A stretch of DNA of 64,000 nt. Source: Styela clava. Taxonomy: Eukaryota. Made by a program: the position numbers and the translations under genes. The DNA lies in the NCBI RefSeq assembly GCF_964204865.1, contig NC_135250.1, forward strand, positions 27,714,001-27,778,000. The letters are read 5' to 3'. Positions within the stretch are counted from its first letter, which is position 1; each line of letters opens with the position of its first letter. Positions 18,760 to 62,537 of the stretch are shown in pieces. The notes beneath the pieces were generated by a model that was given only the letters and a program-made list of their open reading frames with translations, did no database searches and was not told where the DNA came from.

Positions 18760-19034
18760 CTTTAGGTATTGTAAAGCAGCAAATACTCTCTTATTTGATC
18801 TATATCGTATAATAGAGGCTGACATTAAGAAACAGCATTTTTGAAGTATTTGTATGTATATTGCAGTAATGAATATATTTCTAAATGTAAACGTTAGAGA
18901 AGAGACTATAAGTATGCACACTTGATATAACACACTTTTGCAGTCATTTTAATTTAATAGCAGTAGGCTACTTTAATAATTGGCTACACTGTTTACATTT
19001 CTTTCAAAGTGGCGTCAACTGATGTTTCAGTCTC

Positions 19035-20274
19035 TTATTCGAAAGAAAACTCTTCCAAATCTTCGTCTGTAAAACCACTTTGTGGGTGCCATTGAGGTTG
19101 AAATCCTAAAAGAACAAGTTCAATCGTGAGATACATGTTCCACATTGATTGAGTTTATCAGTACTCCCGTAGTATGTGTACCAGGTTAGGGTTGGGCCTT
19201 AATTTTATTCCAATTTTCCCTATTTTAGTTCTATTACTAGTTCGGTGACTGTCTTGTGTTAGCCAAGTGAATATACCCCCTGCCCATAGGCTTCCGTCCC
19301 TTTACACAACTTGTGTGAAGTAGTCGAAAAAAATAAGTTACCTCCATATTGGTACACACACTCCTTGAGCGCCAGTTTAGCTAACTCAGGCATAAAATAC
19401 TTTACCGGTATAAGAAAGGATATATTTCATTCATGTGTATATATATTTATTCACAACAGCAATATTCCTCGTTTAGTTTTCATTTTCAATATTATGAATG
19501 CTTAATATCTTTTGTACGAGTATTTTTAAAAGAACAAGATGGGCACTCGCTACTCCGAGTTTTCCAATTGCAGACTCACAGTTATATAAAGTTCCTCTAT
19601 TAAAATAACTTACTAGTAAAATGTAGCAGTGGCTAAAACATGGTTCCAATTTAATTTGACTTAACAGTTTTGAAGTCTGACTAAATTACCGATACCTTGG
19701 AGTTCAAAATGATGTTTTCGGGGGTATAAATAATGTCTTCAACACCAGCTTGCAACAACAGATTTCAAATCTATATTTCTGGTCTAAATACCATTTAAAA
19801 CTTTTTTTAGCGAATGTTTTAAATTTCAATAAAAACGAAATATTCTCACTTTTTGTGCCCCATTTCATTGGACGAAAGAAAGTTGTGCGAACTATTCCGC
19901 CACGAATTGTTTCACGAGGTCTTTGAAATGTGTGTCTAAATGGTCGATAAGTTTCTGTTCTTTTGCTGAAAAATTAGAGAAATATAAAATACAGATACGG
20001 CAGAATGAATTAAATTAGCTCATTATTAGAAACCTCATTCTTTTCATCTTCAAAACGAAATGTGCTATTTTAAATTCACAGTTTTCACCGTGATTACGCC
20101 TTTGTTTTTTGAAAACATTAGAAAATAACTAAAATTTCGTATTTCGTGCAAATTAAAAATATATATGAAACCAATAGATATAAAAACTTAAGAGATGTCG
20201 ACCTACCTCCACCACGAAGTTGATGTTTGGATTAGAAGTCCAACAATGCAAATGAATAAAATCATTCCATGCAT
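19035..20274 (-). CDS. Secreted host-defence-like prepropeptide, copy A (84 aa, 3 exons)
   Basis: Exons 20207-20274, 19850-19965, 19035-19105; GT-AG introns in phase 2 and 1. Protein MHGMILFICIVGLLIQTSTS-WWSKRTETYRPFRHTFQRPRETIRGGIVRTTFFRPMKWGTKRFQPQWHPQSGFTDEDLEEFSFE*. TATAAAA about 40 nt upstream of the ATG. Confidence 0.82.
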
Positions 20275-20310
20275 TATTTGGGTTATAATCTAGTTAACAA
20301 AAGAAACCAC

Positions 20311-20317
20311 TTTTATA
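20311..20317 (-). promoter_or_regulatory. Putative TATA box of peptide gene A
   Basis: GCTTATAAAAG on the minus strand. Conserved at 23991-23997 (B), 43968-43974 (E) and 62596-62602 (F); altered in C and D. Confidence 0.6.
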
Positions 20318-21884
20318 AGCTAGTCGTACGGTGCTAAACAATAACATGAAAAATGCATTAGTTTTACCATTGTTTTAACTTCTCAATAATCACTTCTCAA
20401 TTCGCCATAATACTTCATTACTCGTCAACTTTCTCATTTTAAAGTATAAGAAACTAAATATTACTGACCACAACATATTGAATGCGTGCAACACCTCCGA
20501 ATGTCGATGTTTATTAAACATACTCGAACTTTGGGGGCAGGATGACCAAACTTTTTTTTTCCATGTTTTGGTTTCATCGCCTAATATCACGAAGTCTGCG
20601 ATACTTTTGTCTCAGTTTCGTTTGTTATGGAACGTTCTTCATCAATCATGTTGTGAATCGATACAAGCTCATCTCTGTCTTATGTTAGTTGAGAATAATA
20701 TTGAGTCATTTCACGCGCCGTCATTTTACAATATGAACTACATGAAAATTCTGATGTTTTTGTATTCATAAGCAAAGAGTATGACAGAGTCTATTTTTCT
20801 TTGTCGATATCAAAAGCAATGCAATAGTCATAAAACATTACACTTACATCGGCATGGCTTTGGTATCTTTCAAAAAACATCTAAAAACTTTAAAACCTAT
20901 CTTGTGCAAAAAAATATAAAAGACAGTATTCATATACTCCTTCAATCAACGATAGTTACAATCTATTATTCGTGATTGACATTATTTATAGTTTTTAAAG
21001 GGTGAAATGATTCTTTAGAACAGTTTTCAAACGTGCTCTATTTTTAGAACTTTTCAAGTCTCGCGCCCTACCTCGAAAATAACTAGATATTACTAGAATA
21101 ACAGCTGGTATGTCGAAAGTGTGGTTTATTCCAGAAAATACGTTGAAAATGCGTGGGTGGAACGTAAATATATATAAAATATCCAAAATAAGGTGGAAGA
21201 TCAAATCTAACAAATATTTTAATAATTTCACGCCCTTTCAAAAAATTGTTCACGCCCCTTTTTGGTTGGACGCGCCTCACCGTTTGAGAACCACTGCTTT
21301 AGAATGTCGGATTGTCATGTTGGAGAGGTGTTGAGGGAGTACTATGTACCAAGAAGCCATTGAGAGTGTTATATCAACCTTGTGTGACACTTGATTTATC
21401 TGGCGCTAACAGCGACATTTTAGGGTAAATATCGAATGATAATCTAGTCTTGTGGAACTATTTTTGTACAAAAATAAAAGCAATACTTCATGATGTTTGG
21501 AATATTTCATTGAATAATATTGACTATTGCATATGCTGAACAAACTATTCCGGTATTTTAGAAACACGTATGCGTATTTCAAGCAAGGTGTGAAATACCA
21601 ACGGTAATTCAGGTGTTCACAGAATCCAGTACTTTGAGATATCACATGATTGCATTGTGCCCGTTGCGGTGTAAGAGGGTCCGACGTTCCCAATTCCGGT
21701 GCAAAAAAAAACTCGTTTGATAACGAATTTCTATACAGAGACAAACTTCAGCGGATGAAGTCGGCAAATTACATTGTTTTGTTAACATGGTTGAGGTCCC
21801 TATCCTCGAAACGAATTTGCCCAGCTTTAGCTAAAATGAGATCTTCATGTGGCGGAGTCTTCATGTGTATTCAGTTTATTATAT

Positions 21885-22168
21885 TGTTACTTATCGATCT
21901 TTAGATCGGTAAGTATGTTGATAGGTGTTTGTTTGTCTGTTAGATGCACGCGATATCTCACGAACGCGTGGTTGATTCTGCTCCAAATTTTGCATGTGCA
22001 TTCATCATATCTCGGACCAGAAGCCTATTAATTTTGGATTTATTAATTATGTCGTATAATTAGCGAGTTATTAATTAATTAGTGATGGGACACGCGGTGT
22101 CACTATAGAGTCATGAATCGAAACCGCAGTTTCGATCGATAAGTCTTCAGTCTCCGACCGATATTCTT
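21885..22168 (+). mobile_element. Helentron-associated (DINE-1/HINE-like) element
   Basis: Subterminal inverted repeat ACTTATCGATC (21889) and GATCGATAAGT (22134), GTTT/GTCT microsatellite near the 5' end, T-rich flanks. It interrupts a block that is contiguous in the paralog near 25590. Confidence 0.6.
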
Positions 22169-22468
22169 TTCTAAGTATTATCAAGTTACCGTATTTGATC
22201 AGTTTTTGGTGACCTGACTAATTTTCATTCCATTCCTTGGCATTGTAATTAAGTAACTTCTCTTCTGATTTGGTATTTATGCAATTTGCATTTGAATAAC
22301 GAATGTTTCAGTAATGAATGTAATTCCATATTAAACGTTACACAGAGAAGAGACTAAGAATACACAAATGCATAAGAAACACGCACTAGCATTTTGTGTG
22401 TCAACAAAAATCTACTTCAATTTGGATACCAGGTCATTTTGAGTGGCTGCAATTAGTGTTTTAGCTTC

Positions 22469-23932
22469 TTATTCGAATAAAAAATCTTCCAAATCTTCGT
22501 CTGCAGAATCACCTTGGACGTCCCACCTAGATAGGAATCCTGTGTATACAAACGTCAATCGTGAGATACATGTTCTACATTGACTGTCTTTTGCCAACTA
22601 GCTCCGGCCCGAAACACTTTGACAATATGAACATAACATTCCATAGGGGTATATAAATAATGACTATATTAATATTTCTAAGTTCGTTTCTCTATGGGTT
22701 TTCGACTTTATAAATAATGTTTTCCATGAGTATTTTCAAAAGCACAAGATCTATCGAGATGTGCACTCGCTACTTCGACTCCAGATTACTAGGTGATATA
22801 TATGTAACACTGCCTCAATCTCGTAGCTAAAATTATTTATCACTGCACATTAATCCCGTGAAAAGCATTGTTTCAATTTGATTCAACTTCGAAGTTAAAC
22901 ATCTGACTAAACAAATCTGTTCCGCCCCGCACCCTACATCAGGGGAATAAAATTGATACTTTATGAAAATATAAATAAAGACTTTAACACCAGCTAGCAA
23001 CAGACTCTAAATCCAATGTCTGTTAAGAATAGAAAATTGGAATTTTTTTGAGCGACTGTTGTCAATTATCACATTTAACGGATTGTTCTTACCCTTTACA
23101 TCCCATTTCCATGAATGGTAATTGGTTGTCTTTACCCCCCATTTACTTGGACGGAAATAGGTTGTTCTGGAAAAAAAAAAACGGTATGAAATACAGATAT
23201 GGTTCGTTTGTAGAATACATAATTAAGTCTGTCGTGGACAGTGTCGTCTTTACCATTGACCTAGAGGCATCTAGCTCTCTCAATTGTAAAGGTTTCTTCC
23301 AGAATGAAGCCGGTATAAAATGTTACAAAACTGATATTTGTTTAATGTTTTGGGCGGGTTATTATATTTTGTCCCAAATTTTTTAGCGTCCAAAAGATTA
23401 AAACAGAATACGACCGAATCAATAAATTTGTCCAGTTTTAAAAATCGCTACCTCTTCAATCTTGATAACGTAATATGCTATTTTAAAATACCAGTTTACC
23501 GTAATAATGCCATTACGTTTTTGAAAAAAAGAGAAAATATCTCAGCAACAACGAATCTAATACTTGATATATTTATTACTAGTTCGTATCGGTAGACGTA
23601 TTTCATGCAAGTTAAAATAAATTCAATACGTCATATGCAAGAAATGTATATGATGAAGTCACAAGGGTTTCATGACGTCAATATTACTCGAGTTACAAAG
23701 ACTGATTTCTCTGACTGATTTGCGTTTTCATTGTAAGCCACAGTTGAATAATTACAAAAGCTTTCAACCGTTACTAACAAAAATTAGGAAATACATGGAT
23801 TCGACAAAAATATTAAAACTTTAAATACTGTCCTCATAACCCCGATAAGATATCGACCTACCTATACCATGCCGAAGTTGATGTTTGGATTAGAAGTTCA
23901 ACAATGCAAATGAGTAAAATCATTCTATTCAT
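22469..23932 (-). CDS. Secreted host-defence-like prepropeptide, copy B (71 aa, 3 exons)
   Basis: Exons 23862-23932, 23093-23166, 22469-22539; phases conserved. Protein MNRMILLICIVELLIQTSTSA-WYRTTYFRPSKWGVKTTNYHSWKWDVKGFLSRWDVQGDSADEDLEDFLFE*. A Glu in the signal h-region may weaken secretion. Confidence 0.8.
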
Positions 23933-25922
23933 TATGTAGCTTTGGATCTATAAGTTCCTGCAAAATAATCCACTACTTATTTATCTCAACTTTTATAAGC
24001 TAGTCGAATGTAGCTGGACAATTACATAAAAAAATACACTGGTTTTACCACTGATTCTACTGCTTATTAATCAACTCCCAATTTGCCATATATTTTTTTT
24101 AATTCAGTTATCTACTTAGAAGTATACGCATACGAAACAAAATATTACTGGCTACAACATATCTGATGCCTGCAACGCCTCCGAATGTGGATGTTTATTA
24201 AACATAATCGAACTTTAAATCGGGGGCAGAATGATGGAATCGTGTTATTTTTCATGTTTTTGTTTCATTGCGTAATATCCCGAAGTTTACGATACTATCA
24301 TGTCAGTTTCGTTTGTTATGGCAATTACTTCATTAAGCATGTTGTGTATCGATACAAGTTCATCTCTGTCTTATGTTAGTTGGAAGTAATAATGGCGAGT
24401 CATTCCACGCACCGTTATTTTACAATACGAGCGATGGGAAAATCCTGATATTTATGTCTCATTAAGAAAACAGTAGGACAAAAAGTCTATTTATTGTGCT
24501 TTGCCGATATCAAAGGCAATGCAATAGCAATAAAACGTTACGCTTACTTGGGGGAAATATTTCTTTAGAACAGTTCTGAAACTTTTGAAGCCGTGCTCTC
24601 TTTTTTAGAATTTGTCAATTCTAAATAAATATAAATATTTAAAATAAAGAGGTTAAGATAAAATCTAACAAATAATTTAAGTTTATTTTGCTTAACGTCC
24701 CCTCAAAAACGCCAATTTGTATGGCGTGCCCACCGTTTGAGAACCAAAACTGCTTTAGAATGTCAACATAAATAAGTGCCTTTAACGAATGAATAGTAAG
24801 CAATTGCGTAGTCATGCGAAGACGATTTTGCTGATGAGCTGGTTTGGATCTACACAAAAACGTTGGAGAAATATTGGTAGAGTACCATGCACGAAGCAGC
24901 TATTGAGAGTGCTTTATATCATCTTCACTGGACTCACCTATCTACCCATTGTGAAACTTATCCGGCGTTATCAACGACATTTTAAGTTTAATATCGTATA
25001 CCAAACTGATCTCGTAGAGTCAATGATTTTTAAATTAAAATATACTTCATGAATGTTGATGTTTAAAATAAAATAATTATATGGAACAATTGGTATGCAT
25101 ATATTTGTTCGTAAGTACTTGGTATGTTGGCAAGCTTGCTTGGCCTAACGTGCAGCTGAGAAATCACAGACATCGTCACATCCCATCCCCCATGTTGTAA
25201 AATATTGACTAGCATATTATGCTCAACCATCGATTCCGGTATTTCGGAAACACGTATGCGTACTTAGAGCAAGGTGAGAAATCTCAACGGTAAGTAAGGC
25301 GTTCACAAAAGCCAGTACTTCGAGATGTCACATGATTACATTGTGCCTGTTGCAGTGTAACTTGCAGACGTTTCAAATCTTTGCCAAAAAAAAAATTTGT
25401 TTGTTGTCGGATTTCTAAACGGGATTTGACTTTAGCTGATGAAGTCGGCAATTACATTATTTTGGTCACACCGGTTGTGGTCTATATCCTCGACACGAAT
25501 ATACTCAGTGGCAATCGTGCGCCATGTGTTTAGCTTAAATGGAATCTTCATGTGGCAGAGATACTTCATGTGTGTTCATTATATTATATTGTCTAATTAT
25601 TATCAAGTCAACTCATAAAGCCTGCACCGACATGTATCCTATCGCGGTTGGTGACCTGACTAATTTTCATTCCATTCCTTGGCATTGTAATGAAGTAACT
25701 TCTCTTCTGATTTGGTATCTATGCAATTTGCATTTGAATATCGGATGTTTCAGTAATGAATGTATTTCCATATTAAAACATTACACTGAGAAGAGGCTAA
25801 GAATTCACATTGATATAAAAATCCTCCATCAGTATATTCCAGGTCAATGTATTGTCCATACTTTTAATTAGACACAAATTTTTCAGTTCTCTTGGAATGG
25901 CTGCAATTGGTGCTTTAGCTTC

Positions 25923-28476
25923 TTATTTGAAAGCGAACTTTTCCAAATCTTCGGCTGCAGAATCACCTTGGCTTCCTGTGTAATAAAATGTCAATTATGA
26001 GTTACTTGTTCGACGATTACTGTGTTTGGCCAGTTCCTACCCTAAAACACATTCCCAGTAGGAGAAATAATTTCTTTTATTGATATATATATATAAATAT
26101 TCACACTATACGTTCATTTCGCCATTTGTTTTCGACATTGTAAATGCTAAGAATTTTTTAATTAAAGGAGTATTCCCAAAAGTTCGGGATCAAATGAGAT
26201 GGGCACTCGCTTCTTGGAGTTTTTAACTGCATATTGCAGGTGATATATATACCCCTATCTCTTAGCTAAAATTATTCATCCCTGCAAATTAGTGGTATAA
26301 AAAGCATTGTTTTATTTCAATTTAACGTGAAAAAACAGAGTATAATAAAATGAATCTATTCCTACATATACATCAGTTAGACCCCGACATACATCAGTTA
26401 TAATTGATAATTGGTGCCTCAAGGGCGTATAAATAATGTCTTAAATACCAGCTAGTAACAATAGATTTAATTCCCAGTGTTTCTAGTCAATATTCGTGAG
26501 CGCAGGTTGTTGTTTATCAAATTCAGCGGAATGTTCTTACCTTTCCCAACCCATTTCATCGAACGGGCGGGGGCTTTACGGGTAGAAAGTGTTCTTATGA
26601 TGAACTTATCATTCTCATGTGTTTGAAATATGCGCCTGCATGGACGATAAAACTTTGTTCTTGTTCTTTTGCTGAAAAGAAAAACGCTATGAAATACAAA
26701 TATTGTTCAGTGTAGAAAACATAATGTAATCTGTCGTACAAAGTGCCGAATTCACGCTTAGCCTAGGGCAGGGGTCACTAAATTTTTTTGACCACGGCCG
26801 GGGTATGACTCAAAACTGTATTTAAACGGGATGGATGAATATTTTTGTCAGTGCAGTACAATAAAGTCACAAAAGTTGGGAAATCCGTTCAATTTATTCA
26901 ACAATATATATTCTACATTTCTGAAGACTCGAATATTAAATTCTATCTAATTCGCGGAATATAGATCGAGAACATCCTAGGAAACAAATATATATACAAG
27001 ATTTCTATATCTAGACAAATATCCTGAGTTTAGCTGTTATCAAAACGTTGCTGTCATGAATTAGGAATGTTACAAAATCCGCTTTTTTGCGCAAAAAAAT
27101 GTTCGCATCACGTCTGCTGAGTACCGTTACGCCGTGTTGGAATACCGCTCCTAAAAAACGACTACGCACTGCCTGCTGTAGCTTGGAATTCCATGAAATT
27201 TTAACACAATTTAGATAAATTAAACAACTATTATCTATCTATTTAATTTTTTGCATTAGCGCATAAATTTCCCAACATTCGGAGCTTTTAAAAAGTACGC
27301 TCCAGTTATACGTAGTGCAAATTAATTATATTGTCCATGGACACCAATAAAATATTTATTTGCGACGTTCTTTCAGTGGTGTCAATGACCGTTGTCAGAA
27401 TAAAATCCTGAAATAGTCTCAATATTCTATAGATGTGACGCACATGGAAAGATTAGTGATTGATATGTGTTCTTTTTTCTTATTTATTACAGTTCTTATC
27501 AAATAAGTAATACAATCCTTATGGAAAAAATTGACCTGTCGGGCGGTTCTAAAATTCCGATATCTCCGTTGGTAACTTGGTATGAAGTTTAATTTTATTG
27601 TAACATACCTTACGCTTTCAGATTACAGTACTGTTAGCGCAAAATGCACATTCCGCGTTCATTTTAGCCCAATGAACGTAAACAGTTTCGTCGAAAGTGT
27701 CTGAGCGGATGCGAAAATGCCCATTATTACGTCACTTTTGTTGCAGTAGTTTGGTGATCCCTGGCCTAGGGAATCCACGCCTTCTAACTTGTAAAAGTTA
27801 GTTCCAGAATAGAGCCGTTTCAAAATGTCACAAATCTGATATTTGTTCAATGGCCCAGTCAAATTAAAAATTCTTGTTTCAAGTTATTTACCGTTTGAGA
27901 GATTAAAACAAAAAACGTCCAATAAATAAATTTGTCTAATTTGGAGAAATTCTCTTCTCAATCATAAAATCGGAATATTCCATTATAAATCTACAGTTTT
28001 TGGACACCCCGATCGTTTTGCATTTTTGGACACCTTGTTGAAAAGTCGCTTTTCTCTTTGATTACTGAGCCAAAAATTTTAAAATTTCATTTTTAAAATT
28101 TTCAGTTGTTAAAGATGAATTTTCTCTCTAGAAGGCTATTTACTTTTATTCTTTTCAAATATTTCCGTTAGCTCTGTGAGATTCGCCGCCGTAGGACGAC
28201 TTCACCAATAAGTCAATGCACGTGAAACAAATAACTGGCTAATTAATCCAATACCCGACATGGACTTATGGCAGGACGAGTGGCCTTGGTTCGCCATATG
28301 ATTAAGTGACCTTATCGACTTTCCTCGACTTATGTAAAAACTTAACCTATCCTATTTCTAATAACTCAATAAACATTTTTAGTATTAGTAATTTTGTCAA
28401 ATATATCGACCTACCTCCACCACCATGAAGTTGGTGTTTTGATTAGAAGTCCAACAATGCAAATGAGTAAAATCAT
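25923..28476 (-). CDS. Secreted host-defence-like prepropeptide, copy C (81 aa from second Met)
   Basis: Exons 28415-28476, 26541-26671, 25923-25975. Protein MILLICIVGLLIKTPTS-WWWSKRTRTKFYRPCRRIFQTHENDKFIIRTLSTRKAPARSMKWVGKGSQGDSAAEDLEKFAFK*. The ancestral ATG is now TTG and the TATA box is altered. Intron 1 carries a 1-kb hAT MITE. Confidence 0.68.
26769..27763. mobile_element. hAT (Charlie-like) MITE in intron 1 of copy C
   Basis: TIRs CAGGGGTCACTAAA and TTTGGTGATCCCTG. Perfect 8-bp TSD GCCTAGGG at 26761-26768 and 27764-27771. Paralogous introns lack it. Confidence 0.88.
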
Positions 28477-32174: not shown

Positions 32175-33113
32175 CTGTTGAAACCCATGTCATTGATTGG
32201 GAGGAGGAGGCTGTTCTGGTAAATCCATACCCCTATTCCCGGGATGTGTTTGAAATCTGTACCGGCATGCACGATAAAACGTTTTGAACTTTTTGCTGAA
32301 GAATAAAAACGTTATGATATACAGATATTGTTCATTGTAGAACACATTATGAAGTCTGTCGTGAACAGTGCCTGATTTACCCTTAGGCTGGGGGAATCCA
32401 CGCCCTCTAAATTGTAAAGGTTCGTTCCAGAGTATCGCCGGTTTAAAATGTAAAATGTAAATAAAACTAATATTCGTTTTATGTTTTAGTCAGGTTAGGA
32501 ATTCTTGTCATGAAATACTCAACGCTCAAAAAATTAAAACAAAAATACGATCAAATAAATAATTTTGTGAAACGATACTTTTTGAATCTTGATAACCTAA
32601 TCTGCTATTTTAAATTGACAGTTTTTACCGTTATATTGTTATTTTTTATTTTGCCTTAATTTTTTTTTTTAAATATGGAAAAATATATCGGCGATAGAGT
32701 ATCTAAAAATTAGTATATTCATTGCTATATCTGATCTATAAATCCGTTTATTTCTAATAATGCAAAGAACGGGTAATATTGACATCAGGTTTTCTGGTGA
32801 TGTTTTTTTTACATTTTCGATTTTTGGCGGTTTTTAAATTCAACTTGCTATCAAATCTTCTTGTGTGATAATGGTATTATCATGCTTGTAAAATTCCGCG
32901 AGTTAAAATTAAATTTATGACGCCATATAAAGATGTAATTTTTCTGACGTCATTTTCAACCAAGCTATTCGTAAATATAGCGACGGGTTCGACACCAATA
33001 TGAAATTTTTATTACTGGCTTCATAACCCCGATAAGATATCGACCTACCTCCATCATGAAGTTGATGTTTGGATTAGAAGTCCAATGTAAATGAATAAAA
33101 TTATTCTATGCAT
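32175..33113 (-). pseudogene. Prepropeptide family copy D (pseudogene)
   Basis: Exon 1 at 33049-33113 reads MHRIILFIYIGLLIQTSTS*W (TGG changed to TGA). Exon 2 at 32175-32295 is 121 nt and frameshifted (KKFKTFYRACRYRFQTHP.../..TRTASSSQSMTWVST). Exon 3 is absent: intron 2 joins upstream-type sequence near 32010. Confidence 0.8.
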
Positions 33114-42642: not shown

Positions 42643-43909
42643 TTATTCAAAAGAAAAATCTTTCCAATCTTCGTCTGCAGTATCACTTTGGACATCCCAC
42701 CAAGATAGGCCGAGACCGTCGTCACCTGTGTAAATAAACGTCAATCATTGGGACTCGCTACTTCGTACTTCGACTCCGAAGTGATATATAAGTAACACTG
42801 CTTCAATCTCTCAGCTAAAATTATTTATCACTGTTCATTATTCATGTGACTTTTCATTGTTTTAATTTAACTAAACAAATCTGTTCCGCCCCGGACCCGA
42901 CATCCCGGGAGTAAAATTGATACTTTATATAAATATAAACAATGTCATCAACACCAGCTAGCAACAACAGACTTTAAATCGAATCTAAATGTCTGGTAAA
43001 AATAAAATATGGCATTTTCTGAGCGACTGTTGTCAATTATTAAATTTAGCCGTTTGTTATTACCTTTTACATCCCATCCCATTAAACGGGTATAGGTTGT
43101 CACGGGGGGTCCGCTGAAAAATAAAAACATTTTGAAATACAGATATATAATGCTCGTTTTTAGAACACATAATGAAGTCTGTCGTGGACAGTGTCGGATT
43201 TAAAACATAACAACCTGGTGGCCCACACCTTCTAAATTGTAAAGGTTCCTTCCAGAATGAAGCCGGTTTAAAATGTTACAAAATGATATTTGTTTAATGT
43301 TTTAGTCAAGTTTTTAATTCTTGTCCCAAATTATTGAGCGTTCAGAAAATTGAAACAAAAATATGGCCAAATGAATAAATTTGTCTAATTTTGAGAACGC
43401 CCCTTCTTTGATCTTATTAACGTTACTTGCTATTATAAAATCACAGTTCACCGTCATTTTTTTGAAAAGATAAGAGAATATCTCAGCAACAACCAATCTA
43501 GGAATTAGTATATTTAAATTTAATACTATTTCTATTGCACCACTGATTACCCTGCTCGGGATCGCACGTTCAATTCCCTCGGGGAATAAATTTGTACAAG
43601 TGGATTGCTGGATTTCTCGCCGTCATAGCGTCGTGCGGTTCATCAACAAGTCCATATTCATAAAACAAATAAATGCCTGGCTGATTAAATAATACCCGAC
43701 ATGGACAGGTAACCAGACGAGTGGCGTGGTTCGTCATATGCCTGAGCCGCCTTTAGGAAATACAGCAATGGAATCAACAAAAATATCAATACTTCAAATA
43801 ATGGTCTCATTAATGGTCACCCCGATGAGATATCGACCTACCTAAACCATAAATTTGATGTTCGGATTAGAAGTCCAACAATGCAAATGAGTAAAATCCT
43901 TCCATGCAT
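42643..43909 (-). CDS. Secreted prepropeptide, copy E (66 aa, 3 exons; near-neutral core)
   Basis: Exons 43842-43909, 43064-43113, 42643-42725. Protein MHGRILLICIVGLLIRTSNL-WFSGPPVTTYTRLMGWDVKGDDGLGLSWWDVQSDTADEDWKDFSFE*. Confidence 0.75.
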
Positions 43910-61240: not shown

Positions 61241-62537
61241 TTATTCAAAAGAAAAATCTTTCAAATCTTCGTCTGCAGTATCACCTTGGACGTTCCACCG
61301 AGATAGGCCGAGACCGTCCACACCTGTGTATATAAACGTCAATCATGTGGACTCGCTATCTCGTACTTCGACTCCAGATTATTAGGTGATATATATGTAA
61401 CACTGCCTCAATCTCGTAGCTAAAATTATTTATCACTGCACATTAATCACGTGAAAAGCATTGTTTCAATTTGATTCAACTTCGAAGTTAAACATCTGAC
61501 TAAACAAATCTGTTCCGCCCCGCACCCCACATCAGGGGAATAAAATTGATACTTTATGGAAATACAAATAAATAATTTAACACCAGCTAGCAACAGCAAC
61601 AGACTCTAAATCCAATCTAAATGTCTGTTAAGAATAAAACAATTGGAATTTCACTGAGCGACTGTTGTCAATTATCACATTTTGCGGATTTTTCTTACCC
61701 TTTACACCCCATTTCCATGGATGGTCTTTGGTTGTCTTTACCCCCCATTTACTTGGACGGTAATAGGTTGTTCTGAAAAATAAAAACGCTATGAAATACA
61801 GATATGGCTCGTTTGTAGAACGCATAATGAAGTCTGTCGTGGACAGTGGCGGATTTAACATTAGCCTGGTGGCCCACACCTTCTAAATTGTAAAGGTTTC
61901 TTCCAGAATGAAGCCGGTAATTAAAATGTTACAAAAATGTTATTTGTTTAATGTTTTAGTCAGGTTTTTAATTCTTGTCCCAAATTATAGAGCGTTCAAA
62001 AAATTGAAACAAAAATATGGCCAAATGGATAAATTTGTCTAATTTTGAGAACGTTCCCTCTTTGATCTTAATAACGTAACTTGCCATATTAAAATCACAG
62101 TTCACAGTTCACCGTAGAATATCTCAGCAACAACGAATCTAGGAATTAGTATATTTATCACTATTACTATCGCGCCACTGATTACCCTGCTTGGGATCGC
62201 AGGTTCGATTCCGTCGGGGAATAAATTTGTACAAGTGGATTGCTGGATTTCTCGCCGTCGTAGCGTCGTACGGTTCATCAACAAGTCCATACCGATAAAA
62301 CAAATAAATGCCTGGCTGATTGAATAATACCCGACATGGACAGGTAACCAGACGAGTGGCGTGGTTCGCCATATGCTTGAGCCTCATTAGGGAAATACAG
62401 CAAGCGAATCAACAAAAATATCAAAACTTTAAATAATGGTCTCATACCCCCGATGAGATATCGACCTACCTATACCATGAAGTTGATGTTCGGATTAGAA
62501 GTCCAACGATGCAAATGAGTAAAATCCTTCCTTGCAT
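61241..62537 (-). CDS. Secreted host-defence-like prepropeptide, copy F (74 aa, 3 exons)
   Basis: Exons 62470-62537, 61699-61772, 61241-61323. Protein MQGRILLICIVGLLIRTSTS-WYRTTYYRPSKWGVKTTKDHPWKWGVKGVDGLGLSRWNVQGDTADEDLKDFSFE*. Exon 2 is visible inside ORF 61628..61879. Confidence 0.82.
62165..62385 (+). mobile_element. Truncated SINE-like repeat in intron 1 of peptide genes
   Basis: Contains a B-box-like GGTTCGATTCC followed by ggattgctgga..tcgccg..taatacccgacatggac..gacgag..ggttcgccatatg. Related copies at about 43535-43752, 28175-28330 and 34872-35150. Confidence 0.5.

What the first reader, a model, noticed from the sequence alone, without database searches (positions are those of the whole stretch)
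22469..22539. Anionic tail aligns with the styelin C-terminal extension and suggests Gly-dependent amidation
Seen: exon 3 encodes Q-G-D-S-A-D-E-D-L-E-D-F-L-F-E in B, QGDTADEDLKDFSFE in F and QGDSAAEDLEKFAFK in C. A second Gly forms at the exon 2/3 junction (K-G) in B, C, E and F. From memory (needs verification), styelin precursors continue after the mature peptide with G-D-M-T-D-E-E-F-Q-D/E-F, the same G-D-x-x-D-E-acidic-hydrophobic-x-acidic-F spacing, and their signal peptides end similarly (..IQQSEA versus ..IQTSTS). Inference: a shared processing module (cleavage before Asp, amidation from Gly) has been joined to a new core. The Trp, Tyr, Lys and Arg residues could carry styelin-D-type modifications (bromo-Trp, DOPA, hydroxylated Lys/Arg).
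Basis: partly seen in the sequence, partly recalled or inferred. Interest (0 to 1): 0.75.

Follow-up and report, generated by a model that had tools for sequence, protein, structure and literature searches.

The report
Sea-squirt peptide genes' acidic tail
This stretch is the last coding exon of one of at least fifteen neighbouring sea-squirt genes for small secreted peptides; its acidic tail does resemble that of the known styelin antimicrobial peptides, but the two gene families are built differently and the glycine needed for amidation sits in only a few copies.

Summary
I found three styelin genes in this genome, reading ..IQQSEA|GW.. and ..L-G-D-M | T-D-E-E-F-Q-[ED]-F...

- For it: B and F align to styelins, without gaps and in one register, better than block-wise shuffles (1-30 of 4000). 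A and C are marginal (47-334 of 4000). A clavanin control shows nothing.
- Against it: a phase-0 intron splits G-D-M|T-D-E-E in the styelin genes, and their intron phases are 2/0/0 against 2/1 here.
- Against it: Pfam Styelin and exon-wise profile searches in both directions do not link the two families.
- Against it: the signal exon matches clavanin at least as well as styelin.
- Against it: a Gly directly before the tail occurs in only 4 of 14 copies.

Most likely this is an apparently unannotated tandem family of secreted, aromatic-rich, mostly cationic propeptides with a charge-masking acidic tail. Amidation is plausible for B, C and F only.

The parts
22469..22539 (-). Gene B, exon 3 coding part (the finding). 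It holds 2 nt of the split Gly codon, then F-L-S-R-W-D-V-Q, Gly (GGT, 22511-22513), the 13-residue acidic tail D-S-A-D-E-D-L-E-D-F-L-F-E (22472-22510) and the TAA stop (22469-22471).
23093..23166 (-). Gene B, exon 2 (74 nt, entered in phase 2, left in phase 1). It encodes two 12-residue modules, T-T-Y-F-R-P-S-K-W-G-V-K and T-T-N-Y-H-S-W-K-W-D-V-K.
   Evidence: low RNA-like contig depth in run X2 on this bin and none in the flanking intron bins
23862..23932 (-). Gene B, exon 1 coding part. ATG lies at 23932-23930. It encodes the signal peptide M-N-R-M-I-L-L-I-C-I-V-E-L-L-I-Q-T-S-T-S, then A-W-Y and 2 nt of a split Arg codon, followed by the donor GTAGGT.
23991..23997 (-). TATAAAA, 59-65 nt upstream of B's ATG. 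Candidate TATA box, found by eye only.
   Evidence: sequence only; not tested
19035..19105 (-). Gene A, exon 3: split Arg codon, then F-Q-P-Q-W-H-P-Q-S-G-F-T-D-E-D-L-E-E-F-S-F-E and stop.
   Evidence: the boundary is seen in spliced contigs of X1, X2 and X8
19850..19965 (-). Gene A, exon 2 (116 nt, 38 whole codons).
   Evidence: contig pieces 19849-19965 in X2 and X8, and 19849-19929 in X1 (its contig ends inside the exon)
20207..20274 (-). Gene A, exon 1 coding part. The transcript contig reaches at least 20335.
   Evidence: contig pieces 20207-20317 and 20207-20335
25923..25975 (-). Gene C, exon 3: split Gly codon, then S-Q-G-D-S-A-A-E-D-L-E-K-F-A-F-K and stop.
26541..26671 (-). Gene C, exon 2 (43 whole codons).
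28415..28476 (-). Gene C, exon 1 coding part.
33051..33113 (-). Copy D, exon 1 with an in-frame TGA. No exon 3 was found, so it is a likely pseudogene.
42643..42725 (-). Gene E, exon 3. It reads ..W-D-V-Q-S-D-T-A-D-E-D-W-K-D-F-S-F-E and stop, with Ser where B, C and F have Gly.
43064..43113 (-). Gene E, exon 2 (one module).
43842..43909 (-). Gene E, exon 1 coding part.
61241..61323 (-). Gene F, exon 3: V-D-G-L-G-L-S-R-W-N-V-Q-G-D-T-A-D-E-D-L-K-D-F-S-F-E and stop.
61699..61772 (-). Gene F, exon 2 (two modules).
62470..62537 (-). Gene F, exon 1 coding part.

Best explanation
The stretch is the last coding exon of gene B. B belongs to a tandem, single-locus family with at least 15 exon-1 copies and 14 exon-3 copies on contig C1, 27.734-27.945 Mb, of a genome that carries the styelin and clavanin genes of Styela clava. 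The genes are small, three-exon and apparently unannotated, and they encode secreted prepropeptides.

Shown:
- Each precursor has a hydrophobic signal ending I-Q-T-S-T-S.
- A Trp-led core follows, rich in Tyr, Trp, Phe, Thr, Lys, Arg and Pro. It is built from one to three 12-residue modules ending W-[GD]-V-[KQ].
- A 13-residue acidic tail ends the protein: D-[ST]-A-D-E-D-L-x-[DE]-F-x-F-E.
- The core carries +5 to +12 in 8 of 9 models, and the tail -5 to -7 in 8 of 9.
- Gene A is spliced and transcribed.

Inferred:
- The tail is a charge-masking or sorting propiece that is removed during maturation, as in styelin and clavanin precursors.
- Where Gly directly precedes it (Q-G-D in B, C and F; Q-G-Y in copy O), cleavage between Gly and the next residue, followed by peptidylglycine amidation, would leave ..V-Q-NH2. 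This follows the L-G-D (styelin) and F-G-D (clavanin) precedents encoded in the same genome.
- Because the Gly is missing in 10 of 14 copies, amidation is optional for some paralogues and is not the family's defining step.
- In 5 of the 11 copies with a readable junction, the exon 2/3 junction reads K-R, a classical dibasic site. That may be the general cut site.

The likeness to the styelin C-terminus (G-L-S .. G-D-x-x-D-E-[DE]-x-x-[DE]-F) is real but short. I read it as either very distant kinship or convergence on the same processing machinery, and not as a shuffled exon module.
For: Gene models: 9 of 9 are in frame with GT-AG introns. Spliced contigs of gene A appear in 3 of 3 RNA-like runs from 3 studies, while the listed pieces of the DNA-like run X10 are colinear with the genome. 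Family size and single locus. The weak hits elsewhere are not genes. Charges and aromatic content. Modules. Styelin and clavanin genes with Gly-Asp after the mature peptide. Both peptide families are described as C-amidated in passages of PMC10608444, and clavanin A is written with -NH2 in PMC4904370. Alignment to styelin pieces in one register, counted as shuffles reaching the observed score against the three styelin genes: B 6, 18 and 1 of 4000; F 1, 30 and 3 of 4000; E 17, 152 and 38; A 103, 106 and 47; C 122, 103 and 334. Clavanin control: p 0.43-0.90. The contiguous motif occurs only at B and F genome-wide, against 0 in the control.
Against: No peptide, processing or activity data exist. 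B's own transcript is supported only by low contig depth on its exon bins, which could be cross-mapping from F because exon 2 is 91% identical. Gene E's core is not cationic (-2) and C's tail is only -2. Between close paralogues, the tail and core change about as fast as introns. For B against F, the tail has 3.5 nonsynonymous changes per 34.5 sites while the intron is 95% identical, so purifying selection on the tail is not shown. The 3' UTR just after the stop is conserved to a similar degree. Signal-peptide cleavage was judged by eye; no predictor was available.
Confidence: 0.55

Rival explanations
1. The family and the styelins share, by descent or exon shuffling, one processing module (signal end plus Gly-Asp acidic tail) that was joined to a new core. 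Cleavage before Asp with Gly-dependent amidation would then be the family's normal maturation.
For: An ungapped, same-register alignment of 22-26 residues at about 31% identity, beating block-wise shuffles for B and F. No such likeness to the clavanin tail. The contiguous motif is otherwise absent from the genome. The order of parts is the same and the first intron is phase 2 in both. hhalign on exon 1 gives P 4.5e-4 with 22 columns aligned.
Against: Exon structures differ, 2/0/0 with an intron inside G-D-M|T-D-E-E against 2/1 with none there. The aligned block is not bounded by introns in either gene. Pfam Styelin gives no match to any of the six family exon peptides tested at E<=1, and genome-wide it hits only the three styelin genes. 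Exon-wise HMM and protein searches fail in both directions at E<=10. hhalign on the tail gives probability 2.5%. The signal exon matches clavanin better, at probability 63% and P 7e-5. Gly directly before the tail is present in only 4 of 14 copies.
Confidence: 0.2
2. The likeness to styelins comes from convergence or chance in short acidic sequences, and the real maturation site is the exon 2/3 junction. Cleavage after the invariant-like Lys plus Arg/Gly would release a longer C-terminal piece, or the tail would stay on the secreted product. In this case the Q-G-D Gly has no role.
For: The junction reads K-R in A, J, K, M and O, and K-G in B, C, E, F and G (N-G in H). In seven copies the tail follows the junction after only F-[LT]-S. 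The Gly before the tail has been lost repeatedly, by point changes in E and I and by a 6-codon gap in the G-type copies. The exon-wise tail-only test against styelin exon 3 is weak, with p from 0.008 to 0.5.
Against: The same-register alignment including G-L-S and G-D is rarely reached by shuffles for B and F. K-G is not a known convertase site (general knowledge). Styelin and clavanin precedents in the same animal cut at Gly|Asp.
Confidence: 0.2
3. The products are not host-defence peptides at all. They could be Tyr/Trp-rich substrates for oxidative cross-linking (DOPA-type tunic or wound-repair material), signalling peptides, or fast-evolving orphan genes of little function.
For: Aromatic residues make up 6-11 of 33-51 core residues, with Tyr-Tyr and Pro in a repeated module. 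Gene E has a non-cationic core. There are no homologues in protein libraries. Evolution between paralogues looks near-neutral. Pseudogene D and a lost stop codon in copy I point the same way.
Against: A cationic core paired with a neutralising acidic tail is the typical antimicrobial-precursor layout. The frame is kept in 9 of 9 complete models. Gene A is transcribed and spliced.
Confidence: 0.15

Closest known systems
Styelins of Styela clava (Pfam PF17562). Three genes were found here on contig C10 at about 16.31-16.34 Mb.
   Same: A secreted precursor in the order signal, cationic aromatic peptide beginning with or next to Trp, then Gly-Asp and an acidic tail. The spacing G-D-x-x-D-E-[DE]-hydrophobic-x-[DE]-F is shared. 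An extra G-L-S match lies 8 residues upstream in F and B. The first intron is phase 2.
   Different: There is no Pfam match. The core is unrelated: 12-residue T-T-Y-Y-x-P-x-x-W-G-V-K modules instead of a 31-32-residue Phe-rich peptide with K-H-K. The tail is 13 residues against 27. There are 3 coding exons with phases 2/1 against 4 with phases 2/0/0, and styelin has an intron inside G-D-M|T-D-E-E. Gly is invariant in 3 of 3 styelin genes but directly precedes the tail in only 4 of 14 copies here.
Clavanins of Styela clava (Pfam PF05452). Two genes were found on contig C1 at about 10.54 and 10.57 Mb.
   Same: Three coding exons with intron phases 2/1. The last exon carries the end of the peptide, a Gly-Asp junction, the acidic tail and the stop. 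The signal exon gives the best hhalign score to this family, at probability 63% over 14 columns.
   Different: There is no Pfam match. The tails are not alike (p 0.43-0.90). Intron 1 lies 7-8 codons earlier in clavanin. The clavanin mature peptide is His-rich and 23 residues long, and it has an extra N-terminal propiece.
Botryllin (Botryllus schlosseri) and the other styelin-like gene clusters that earlier notes of this scan report in this genome.
   Same: Styelid, hemocyte-type prepropeptides with a cationic peptide and a long propiece (passages of PMC9966394; scan notes).
   Different: Botryllin is 158 residues long and 30-37.5% identical to styelins in the mature part. This family shows no such match. 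Two styelin-like C4 genes that I looked at start G-W-F like styelins, and their exon 1 does not match this family.
Trp-rich cationic peptides such as indolicidin or tritrpticin, and amphibian precursors with conserved prepro parts and hypervariable cores (recalled, not tested).
   Same: Trp/Arg/Lys-rich short cores. Signal and propiece are conserved more than the core.
   Different: No sequence relation was examined. Those peptides are not built of 12-residue modules and carry no such C-terminal tail.

Membership tests
Styelin (Pfam PF17562) | Match to the family profile at or above the curated cut-off (27 bits) | tested here: not met
   0 families at E<=1 for 6 of 6 family exon peptides tested: A, C and G exon 2; B exon 2; B and F exon 3. 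As a positive control, styelin exon 1 gave 24.7 bits on 15 columns. Genome-wide, 9 of 9 PF17562 matches lie in the three C10 styelin genes and none in the C1 cluster. The test was exon by exon; the joined model was not searched.
Styelin (Pfam PF17562) | Mature peptide of 31-32 residues starting G-W-[FL], Phe-rich, with a K-H-K motif | tested here: not met
   The family cores start W/A-W and consist of T-T-Y-Y-type modules without K-H-K.
Styelin (Pfam PF17562) | C-terminal extension L-G-D-M-T-D-E-E-F-Q-x-F.. after the mature peptide | tested here: inconclusive
   The same-register ungapped alignment beats block-wise shuffles for B (1-18 of 4000) and F (1-30 of 4000). It is marginal for A (47-106) and C (103-334). 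hhalign on the tail exon aligns 7 columns, with P 0.019 and probability 2.5%. Neither the family exon-3 profile nor the styelin exon-3 profile finds the other family at E<=10.
Styelin (Pfam PF17562) | Gene structure of the styelin genes in this genome: four coding exons, intron phases 2/0/0 | tested here: not met
   3 of 3 styelin genes share that structure. 9 of 9 family models have three coding exons with phases 2/1.
Styelin (Pfam PF17562) | C-terminal amide and modified residues (6-bromo-Trp, DOPA, dihydroxy-Lys/Arg) in the natural peptide | not testable with these tools
   The properties are taken from passages of PMC10608444. Testing needs mass spectrometry.
Clavanin (Pfam PF05452) | Match to the family profile at or above the curated cut-off (21 bits) | tested here: not met
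   0 families for the six family exon peptides. As a positive control, the clavanin last exon scored 119 bits. None of the 7 genome-wide matches lies in the C1 27.7-27.9 Mb cluster.
Clavanin (Pfam PF05452) | Three coding exons with phases 2/1, and a last exon holding the peptide end, Gly-Asp, the acidic tail and the stop | tested here: met
   Clavanin genes L028 and L029 were read by eye. This is a resemblance in layout, not a sufficient criterion, because intron 1 is not at the same codon.
Cationic host-defence prepropeptide with anionic propiece (a kind, not a homology family) | N-terminal signal peptide | tested here: inconclusive
   There is a hydrophobic stretch I-L-L-I-C-I-V-x-L-L-I followed by small residues T-S-T-S. 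It was judged by eye because no signal-peptide predictor was available.
Cationic host-defence prepropeptide with anionic propiece (a kind, not a homology family) | Net cationic core balanced by an acidic pro-region | tested here: met
   The core carries +5 to +12 in 8 of 9 models (E is -2). The tail carries -5 to -7 in 8 of 9 (C is -2).
Cationic host-defence prepropeptide with anionic propiece (a kind, not a homology family) | Gly as amide donor at the core/tail boundary | tested here: not met
   As a family feature it fails. Gly directly before the tail occurs in 4 of 14 exon-3 copies: G-D in B, C and F, and G-Y in O. Copy A has S-G-F. The other 9 lack it.
Cationic host-defence prepropeptide with anionic propiece (a kind, not a homology family) | Antimicrobial activity of the released peptide | not testable with these tools
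   Needs synthesis and assay.

The most novel reading that the evidence does not exclude
The C1 cluster encodes a previously undescribed class of modular sea-squirt peptides. One to three 12-residue Tyr/Trp modules ending W-[GD]-V-[KQ] would be released at Gly or Arg boundary residues, amidated where Gly is present, and possibly brominated or hydroxylated like styelin D. The family would be a far-diverged offshoot of the styelin lineage that kept only the Gly-Asp acidic tail while its core was replaced by a repeat and its introns were reshuffled. That would give a natural example of how a processing cassette outlives the peptide it serves.
Probability: 0.2. Interest if true: 0.65.

Novelty: new variant of a known kind. 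Interest (0 to 1): 0.42.

Why it matters
Styela clava is a classic source of modified, salt-tolerant antimicrobial peptides, yet only styelins, clavanins and clavaspirin are characterised. Here is a 15-copy, transcribed gene family that three library searches did not find in public protein sets. It has the same overall precursor logic and a tail with styelin-like spacing. It gives concrete candidates for peptidomics, namely the predicted ..VQ-amide products of B, C and F. It also offers a natural experiment on whether Gly|Asp cleavage with amidation is a general rule in this animal, because paralogues with and without the Gly sit side by side. In addition, the work records the exon structures of the styelin and clavanin genes, which are needed for any claim about shared modules. 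The specific claim of a shared styelin module is weakened, so the value lies in the family and in the testable processing prediction, not in a proven evolutionary link.

Tried and rejected
- **Styelin patterns that failed.** Patterns for S-V-S-N-F-x-K-K-H-K, and a looser version, found no styelin gene. The one promising hit was noise. The motif turned out to be split by styelin intron 1.
- **Papers not held.** Zhao 1997 and Taylor 2000 are not held. The reviews I read in passages printed no precursor sequences.
- **Weak C5 hits.** The weak C5 hits of the exon-1 profile (E 0.16-0.7) are short open frames without a gene context. I rejected them as relatives.
- **Selection tests.** Nei-Gojobori counts between close paralogues are too small to show selection either way.
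- **Tail-only test.** The shuffle test of the tail alone against styelin exon 3 is weak (p 0.008-0.5). Only the in-register test that includes the end of styelin exon 2 is clearly above shuffles.
- **Signal-peptide likeness.** I first counted it as support and then discounted it after the clavanin control.
- **Two styelin-like C4 genes.** I glanced at them but did not resolve their tails, so they say nothing on intron turnover within the styelin lineage.
- **Protein searches.** phmmer with A exon 2 gave 0 hits at E<=0.001. Two word-index searches gave no candidates. A blank there does not prove absence, because A's exon 2 is short and biased and the index needs three shared 5-residue words.
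- **Literature.** Two full-text searches, seen as listings only, showed no paper on such a family. Supplements are closed. Supplementary Figure S1 of PMC9966394 (botryllin gene organisation) could bear on exon structure in styelin-like genes and was not seen.
- **Not done.** I did not search the joined spliced model, did not look up B's exact protein, did not use a signal-peptide predictor, made no structure prediction, and searched no other tunicate genomes (none are in reach).
Full report
**What lies at the coordinates.** The feature is on the minus strand. From 22537 down to 22469 the frame reads F-L-S-R-W-D-V-Q-G-D-S-A-D-E-D-L-E-D-F-L-F-E-stop. The exon begins at 22539, directly behind an acacag acceptor. 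It is the third and last coding exon of a small gene (B).
- Exon 1 runs 23932->23862 and encodes M-N-R-M-I-L-L-I-C-I-V-E-L-L-I-Q-T-S-T-S-A-W-Y plus 2 nt. Its donor is GTAGGT.
- Exon 2 runs 23166->23093 and encodes T-T-Y-F-R-P-S-K-W-G-V-K-T-T-N-Y-H-S-W-K-W-D-V-K plus 1 nt. Its donor is GTAAGA.
- A TATAAAA lies 59-65 nt upstream of the ATG (seen by eye only).

**The family.**
- blastn of the B region against the window finds six minus-strand paralogues, A to F.
- An HMM of the five intact exon-1 peptides finds 15 copies in the whole 377-Mb assembly. All lie on contig C1 between 27,734,209 and 27,945,111, and one of them (D) has an in-frame TGA.
- The ten weaker hits elsewhere (E 0.16-5.2) were checked at two places and are not genes.
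- An exon-3 HMM finds 12 copies in the same interval. A script found two more, H and J, giving 14.
- Nine copies could be modelled completely. 9 of 9 have GT..AG introns, are in frame, and have intron phases 2 and 1. For copies I, L and N no clean exon 2 was resolved. H and J were read only around exon 2 and exon 3.

**Transcription.**
- Logan contigs of three RNA-like runs from three studies (X1, X2, X8) and of one DNA-like holder (X10) were laid on window 18800-24100.
- In 3 of 3 RNA-like runs a contig skips gene A's introns at the predicted sites: X2 and X8 span all three exons (18962/18981-19104 | 19849-19965 | 20207-20317/20335), while the 185-nt X1 contig shows only the exon 2/3 joint (19001-19104 | 19849-19929).
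- The listed X10 pieces are colinear with the genome. Gene A is therefore spliced and transcribed.
- That result corrected my first guess for A's exon 2.
- For B there is only low contig depth on the bins holding its exons. For X1, X2 and X8 the values are 1.63, 6.26 and 1.34 on 22340-22516. X2 shows 3.05 on 23048-23224, and X1 shows 5.57 on 23756-23932.
- All three runs show zero depth on the intron bins.
- No B joint was listed, and contigs from F could cross-map. B's model therefore rests on consensus sites and paralogue conservation.

**The organism and the reference genes.**
- Earlier notes of this scan name the genome Styela clava (treated as leads only).
- I tested this indirectly. A pattern back-translated from the partial styelin A/B sequence printed in PMC8719109 (passages) hits one place exactly. 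This led to three styelin genes on contig C10.
- A pattern from clavanin A as printed in PMC4904370 (passage) hits two clavanin genes on C1 at about 10.5 Mb.
- Pfam confirms both assignments: PF17562 Styelin and PF05452 Clavanin.
- The genome therefore carries the peptide genes that define S. clava.

**The recalled styelin features.** Exon by exon, the styelin C-type gene reads:
- M-Q-M-K-A-T-I-L-I-V-L-V-A-L-F-M-I-Q-Q-S-E-A-G-W-F-G-K-A-F-R-S-V-S-N-F-Y-K (+2 nt)
- H-K-T-Y-I-H-A-G-L-S-A-A-T-M-L-G-D-M
- T-D-E-E-F-Q-E-F-M-Q-D-I-E-Q-A-R-E-E-E
- L-L-S-R-Q-stop

**Test 1: is the alignment better than shuffled acidic sequences?**
- Against styelin exon 3 alone, the family tails all align best in one register ([AT]-D-E-D-L-x-D-F on T-D-E-E-F-Q-E-F). 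The scores are only weakly unusual: p 0.045-0.063 for B, 0.09-0.10 for F, 0.06 for E, 0.008-0.012 for A, and 0.34-0.50 for C.
- I then scored whole exon-3 peptides against the two styelin pieces (end of exon 2, then exon 3) at a common register. The alignment then also covers G-D on G-D and, in F and B, (G)-L-S on G-L-S eight residues upstream.
- That gives 8 identities in 26 positions for F and 7 in 22 for B.
- Block-wise shuffles on both sides, keeping acidic residues in the tail blocks, reach the observed score as follows against the three styelin genes: B in 6, 18 and 1 of 4000; F in 1, 30 and 3; E in 17, 152 and 38; A in 103, 106 and 47; C in 122, 103 and 334 (a first version is).
- The same test against a real acidic tail of the same animal, the clavanin last exon, gives nothing (p 0.43-0.90).
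- The contiguous DNA motif for G-D-x-x-D-E-[DE]-x-x-[DE]-F occurs only at B and F in the whole genome, against 0 for the reversed control.

**Profile methods do not connect the families.**
- The family exon-1 and exon-3 HMMs do not hit the styelin locus at E<=10.
- Styelin exon 1 as a protein query, and the styelin exon-3 HMM, do not hit the C1 cluster.
- Pfam Styelin and Pfam Clavanin give no match to 6 of 6 family exon peptides at E<=1. Genome-wide, they hit only their own genes.
- hhalign of family exon 3 against styelin exon 3 aligns 7 columns (P 0.019, probability 2.5%). Against styelin exon 2 it aligns nothing.
- The signal exon aligns to styelin exon 1 over 22 columns (32% identity, P 4.5e-4, probability 33%).
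- The control against the clavanin signal exon scores higher (14 columns, 36% identity, P 7.2e-5, probability 63%).
- Two styelin-like C4 genes score nothing.
- The ..I-Q-T-S-T-S / ..I-Q-Q-S-E-A likeness therefore does not discriminate between families.

**Test 2: exon structure.**
- 3 of 3 styelin genes have four coding exons with intron phases 2, 0 and 0.
- Intron 1 lies inside the mature peptide, 15 codons after the signal. Intron 2 lies between G-D-M and T-D-E-E. Intron 3 lies before L-[LQ]-S-R-Q.
- The family has three coding exons with phases 2 and 1. Intron 1 lies 2-3 codons after the signal and intron 2 lies in the K-[GR] codon. The tail has no intron.
- In the alignment above, the family's intron 2 and styelin's intron 1 are 8 nt apart for F and differ in phase.
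- The similar block is not bounded by introns in either gene.
- The clavanin genes do share the 2/1 pattern and a last exon holding peptide end, G-D, acidic tail and stop. Their intron 1 lies 7-8 codons earlier, however, and their tail is unlike this one.

**Test 3: is the Gly a family feature?**

| What precedes the tail | Copies | Count of 14 |
|---|---|---|
| Q-G-D | B, C, F | 3 |
| Q-G-Y | O | 1 |
| Q-S-G-F | A | 1 |
| Q-S-D | E | 1 |
| E-I-D | I | 1 |
| (junction residue)-F-[LT]-S then D-S-A-D.. | G, H, J, K, L, M, N | 7 |

- The last group lacks the R-W-D-V-Q-G segment.
- In the styelin genes Gly is kept in 3 of 3, and in the clavanin genes in 2 of 2.
- Amidation from Gly can therefore hold at most for some paralogues.

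**How it most likely works.**
- The precursor layout is shown. The core carries +5 to +12 in 8 of 9 models and is 18-26% aromatic. It is made of 12-residue modules: one in E, two in B and F, three in the G-type copies, and other N-terminal extensions in A, C and O. The 13-residue tail carries -5 to -7 in 8 of 9.
- I infer that the tail masks the core's charge or guides sorting, and that it is removed.
- Styelins and clavanins are described as C-amidated (PMC10608444 passages; PMC4904370 passage), and their genes here put G-D right after the mature end. By that precedent, B, C and F would end ..V-Q-amide.
- The K-R junctions suggest an additional or alternative convertase-type cut.
- None of this is shown experimentally.

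**Evolutionary signal.**
- Close paralogues have introns 94-95% identical (B/F and the G-type copies).
- B against F shows 5 nonsynonymous and 0 synonymous changes in exon 2.
- In the 14 tail codons it shows 3.5 nonsynonymous and 1.5 synonymous changes.
- The counts are too small to conclude anything, but they give no sign of strong constraint on individual tail residues.
- The first 30 nt of the 3' UTR are conserved to a similar degree.

**Known or new.**
- phmmer of A's exon 2 against 1.84 billion representatives gave 0 hits at E<=0.001.
- Word-index searches with open frames spanning exon 2 of a G-type copy and of B gave no candidate.
- Two full-text searches, seen as listings only, showed no paper on such peptides.
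- Within these limits the family looks unannotated and undescribed. The limits are that queries were exon-level, the joined model was not searched, and supplements are closed.
- Other notes report several further styelin-like clusters in this genome on other DNA. I did not test those.

**Verdict.** There is a specific, short, statistically above-shuffle likeness to the styelin C-terminus, and Q-G-D in B, C and F is a plausible Gly|Asp amidation site. There is no shared exon module, no profile-level membership in the styelins, no styelin-specific signal peptide, and no conserved Gly across the family.

Noticed in passing
G000 C1:27,778,001-27,945,111 (loci L010-L026), beyond the window's end: The family continues for another 170 kb or so, with nine more exon-1 copies and nine more exon-3 copies. 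Seven of them form a young G-type subgroup with three modules in exon 2 and a tail that follows the junction after only F-[LT]-S. Copy I has lost its stop codon (TAA to TTA). Copy L seems to lack the exon-2 donor.
   Followed up: partly
window exon 2 of A-F (e.g. 23093-23166, 61699-61772, 43064-43113) and L011:3118-3225: The cores are built of 12-residue modules (T-T-Y-[YF]-[RS]-P-x-[KE]-W-[GD]-V-K) with copy number 1 to 3. The exon-3 segment ..S-R-W-D-V-Q looks like a further half module, so each module end is followed by Gly, Arg or Thr.
   Followed up: partly
window 23093/22539, 19850/19105 and the equivalent junctions of the other copies: The codon split by intron 2 is GGA/GGT (Gly) in B, C, E, F, G and H, and AGA (Arg) in A, J, K, M and O. 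It differs by the last base of exon 2, so the junction reads K-G or the dibasic K-R.
   Followed up: partly
window 19154-19507 and 21809-22162: Very high contig depth in all four runs (up to about 1.4 million summed word depth in X10), with many variants and loose ends. These are high-copy interspersed repeats between genes A and B. A copy of the second repeat also lies about 1.3 kb downstream of the styelin C-type gene (C10 at about 16,338,700-16,338,900).
   Followed up: no
G000 C10:16,312,433-16,341,875 (L030, L007, L009): There are three styelin genes, two on the minus strand and one on the plus strand. All have four coding exons with phases 2/0/0, and apparently also a non-coding first exon. 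One is close to the printed styelin A/B N-terminus and one has a G-W-L-R-K-type N-terminus.
   Followed up: partly
G000 C1:10,536,859-10,576,278 (L028, L029): Two nearly identical clavanin genes lie 36 kb apart, each with three coding exons and phases 2/1. A 20-nt middle exon encodes only A-K-S-L-E-E.
   Followed up: partly
window 42643-43909 (gene E): Gene E has a single module and a net negative core (-2). It also has Ser in place of the Gly before the tail. It may be a non-cationic or decaying member.
   Followed up: no
I did not examine it.
   Followed up: no
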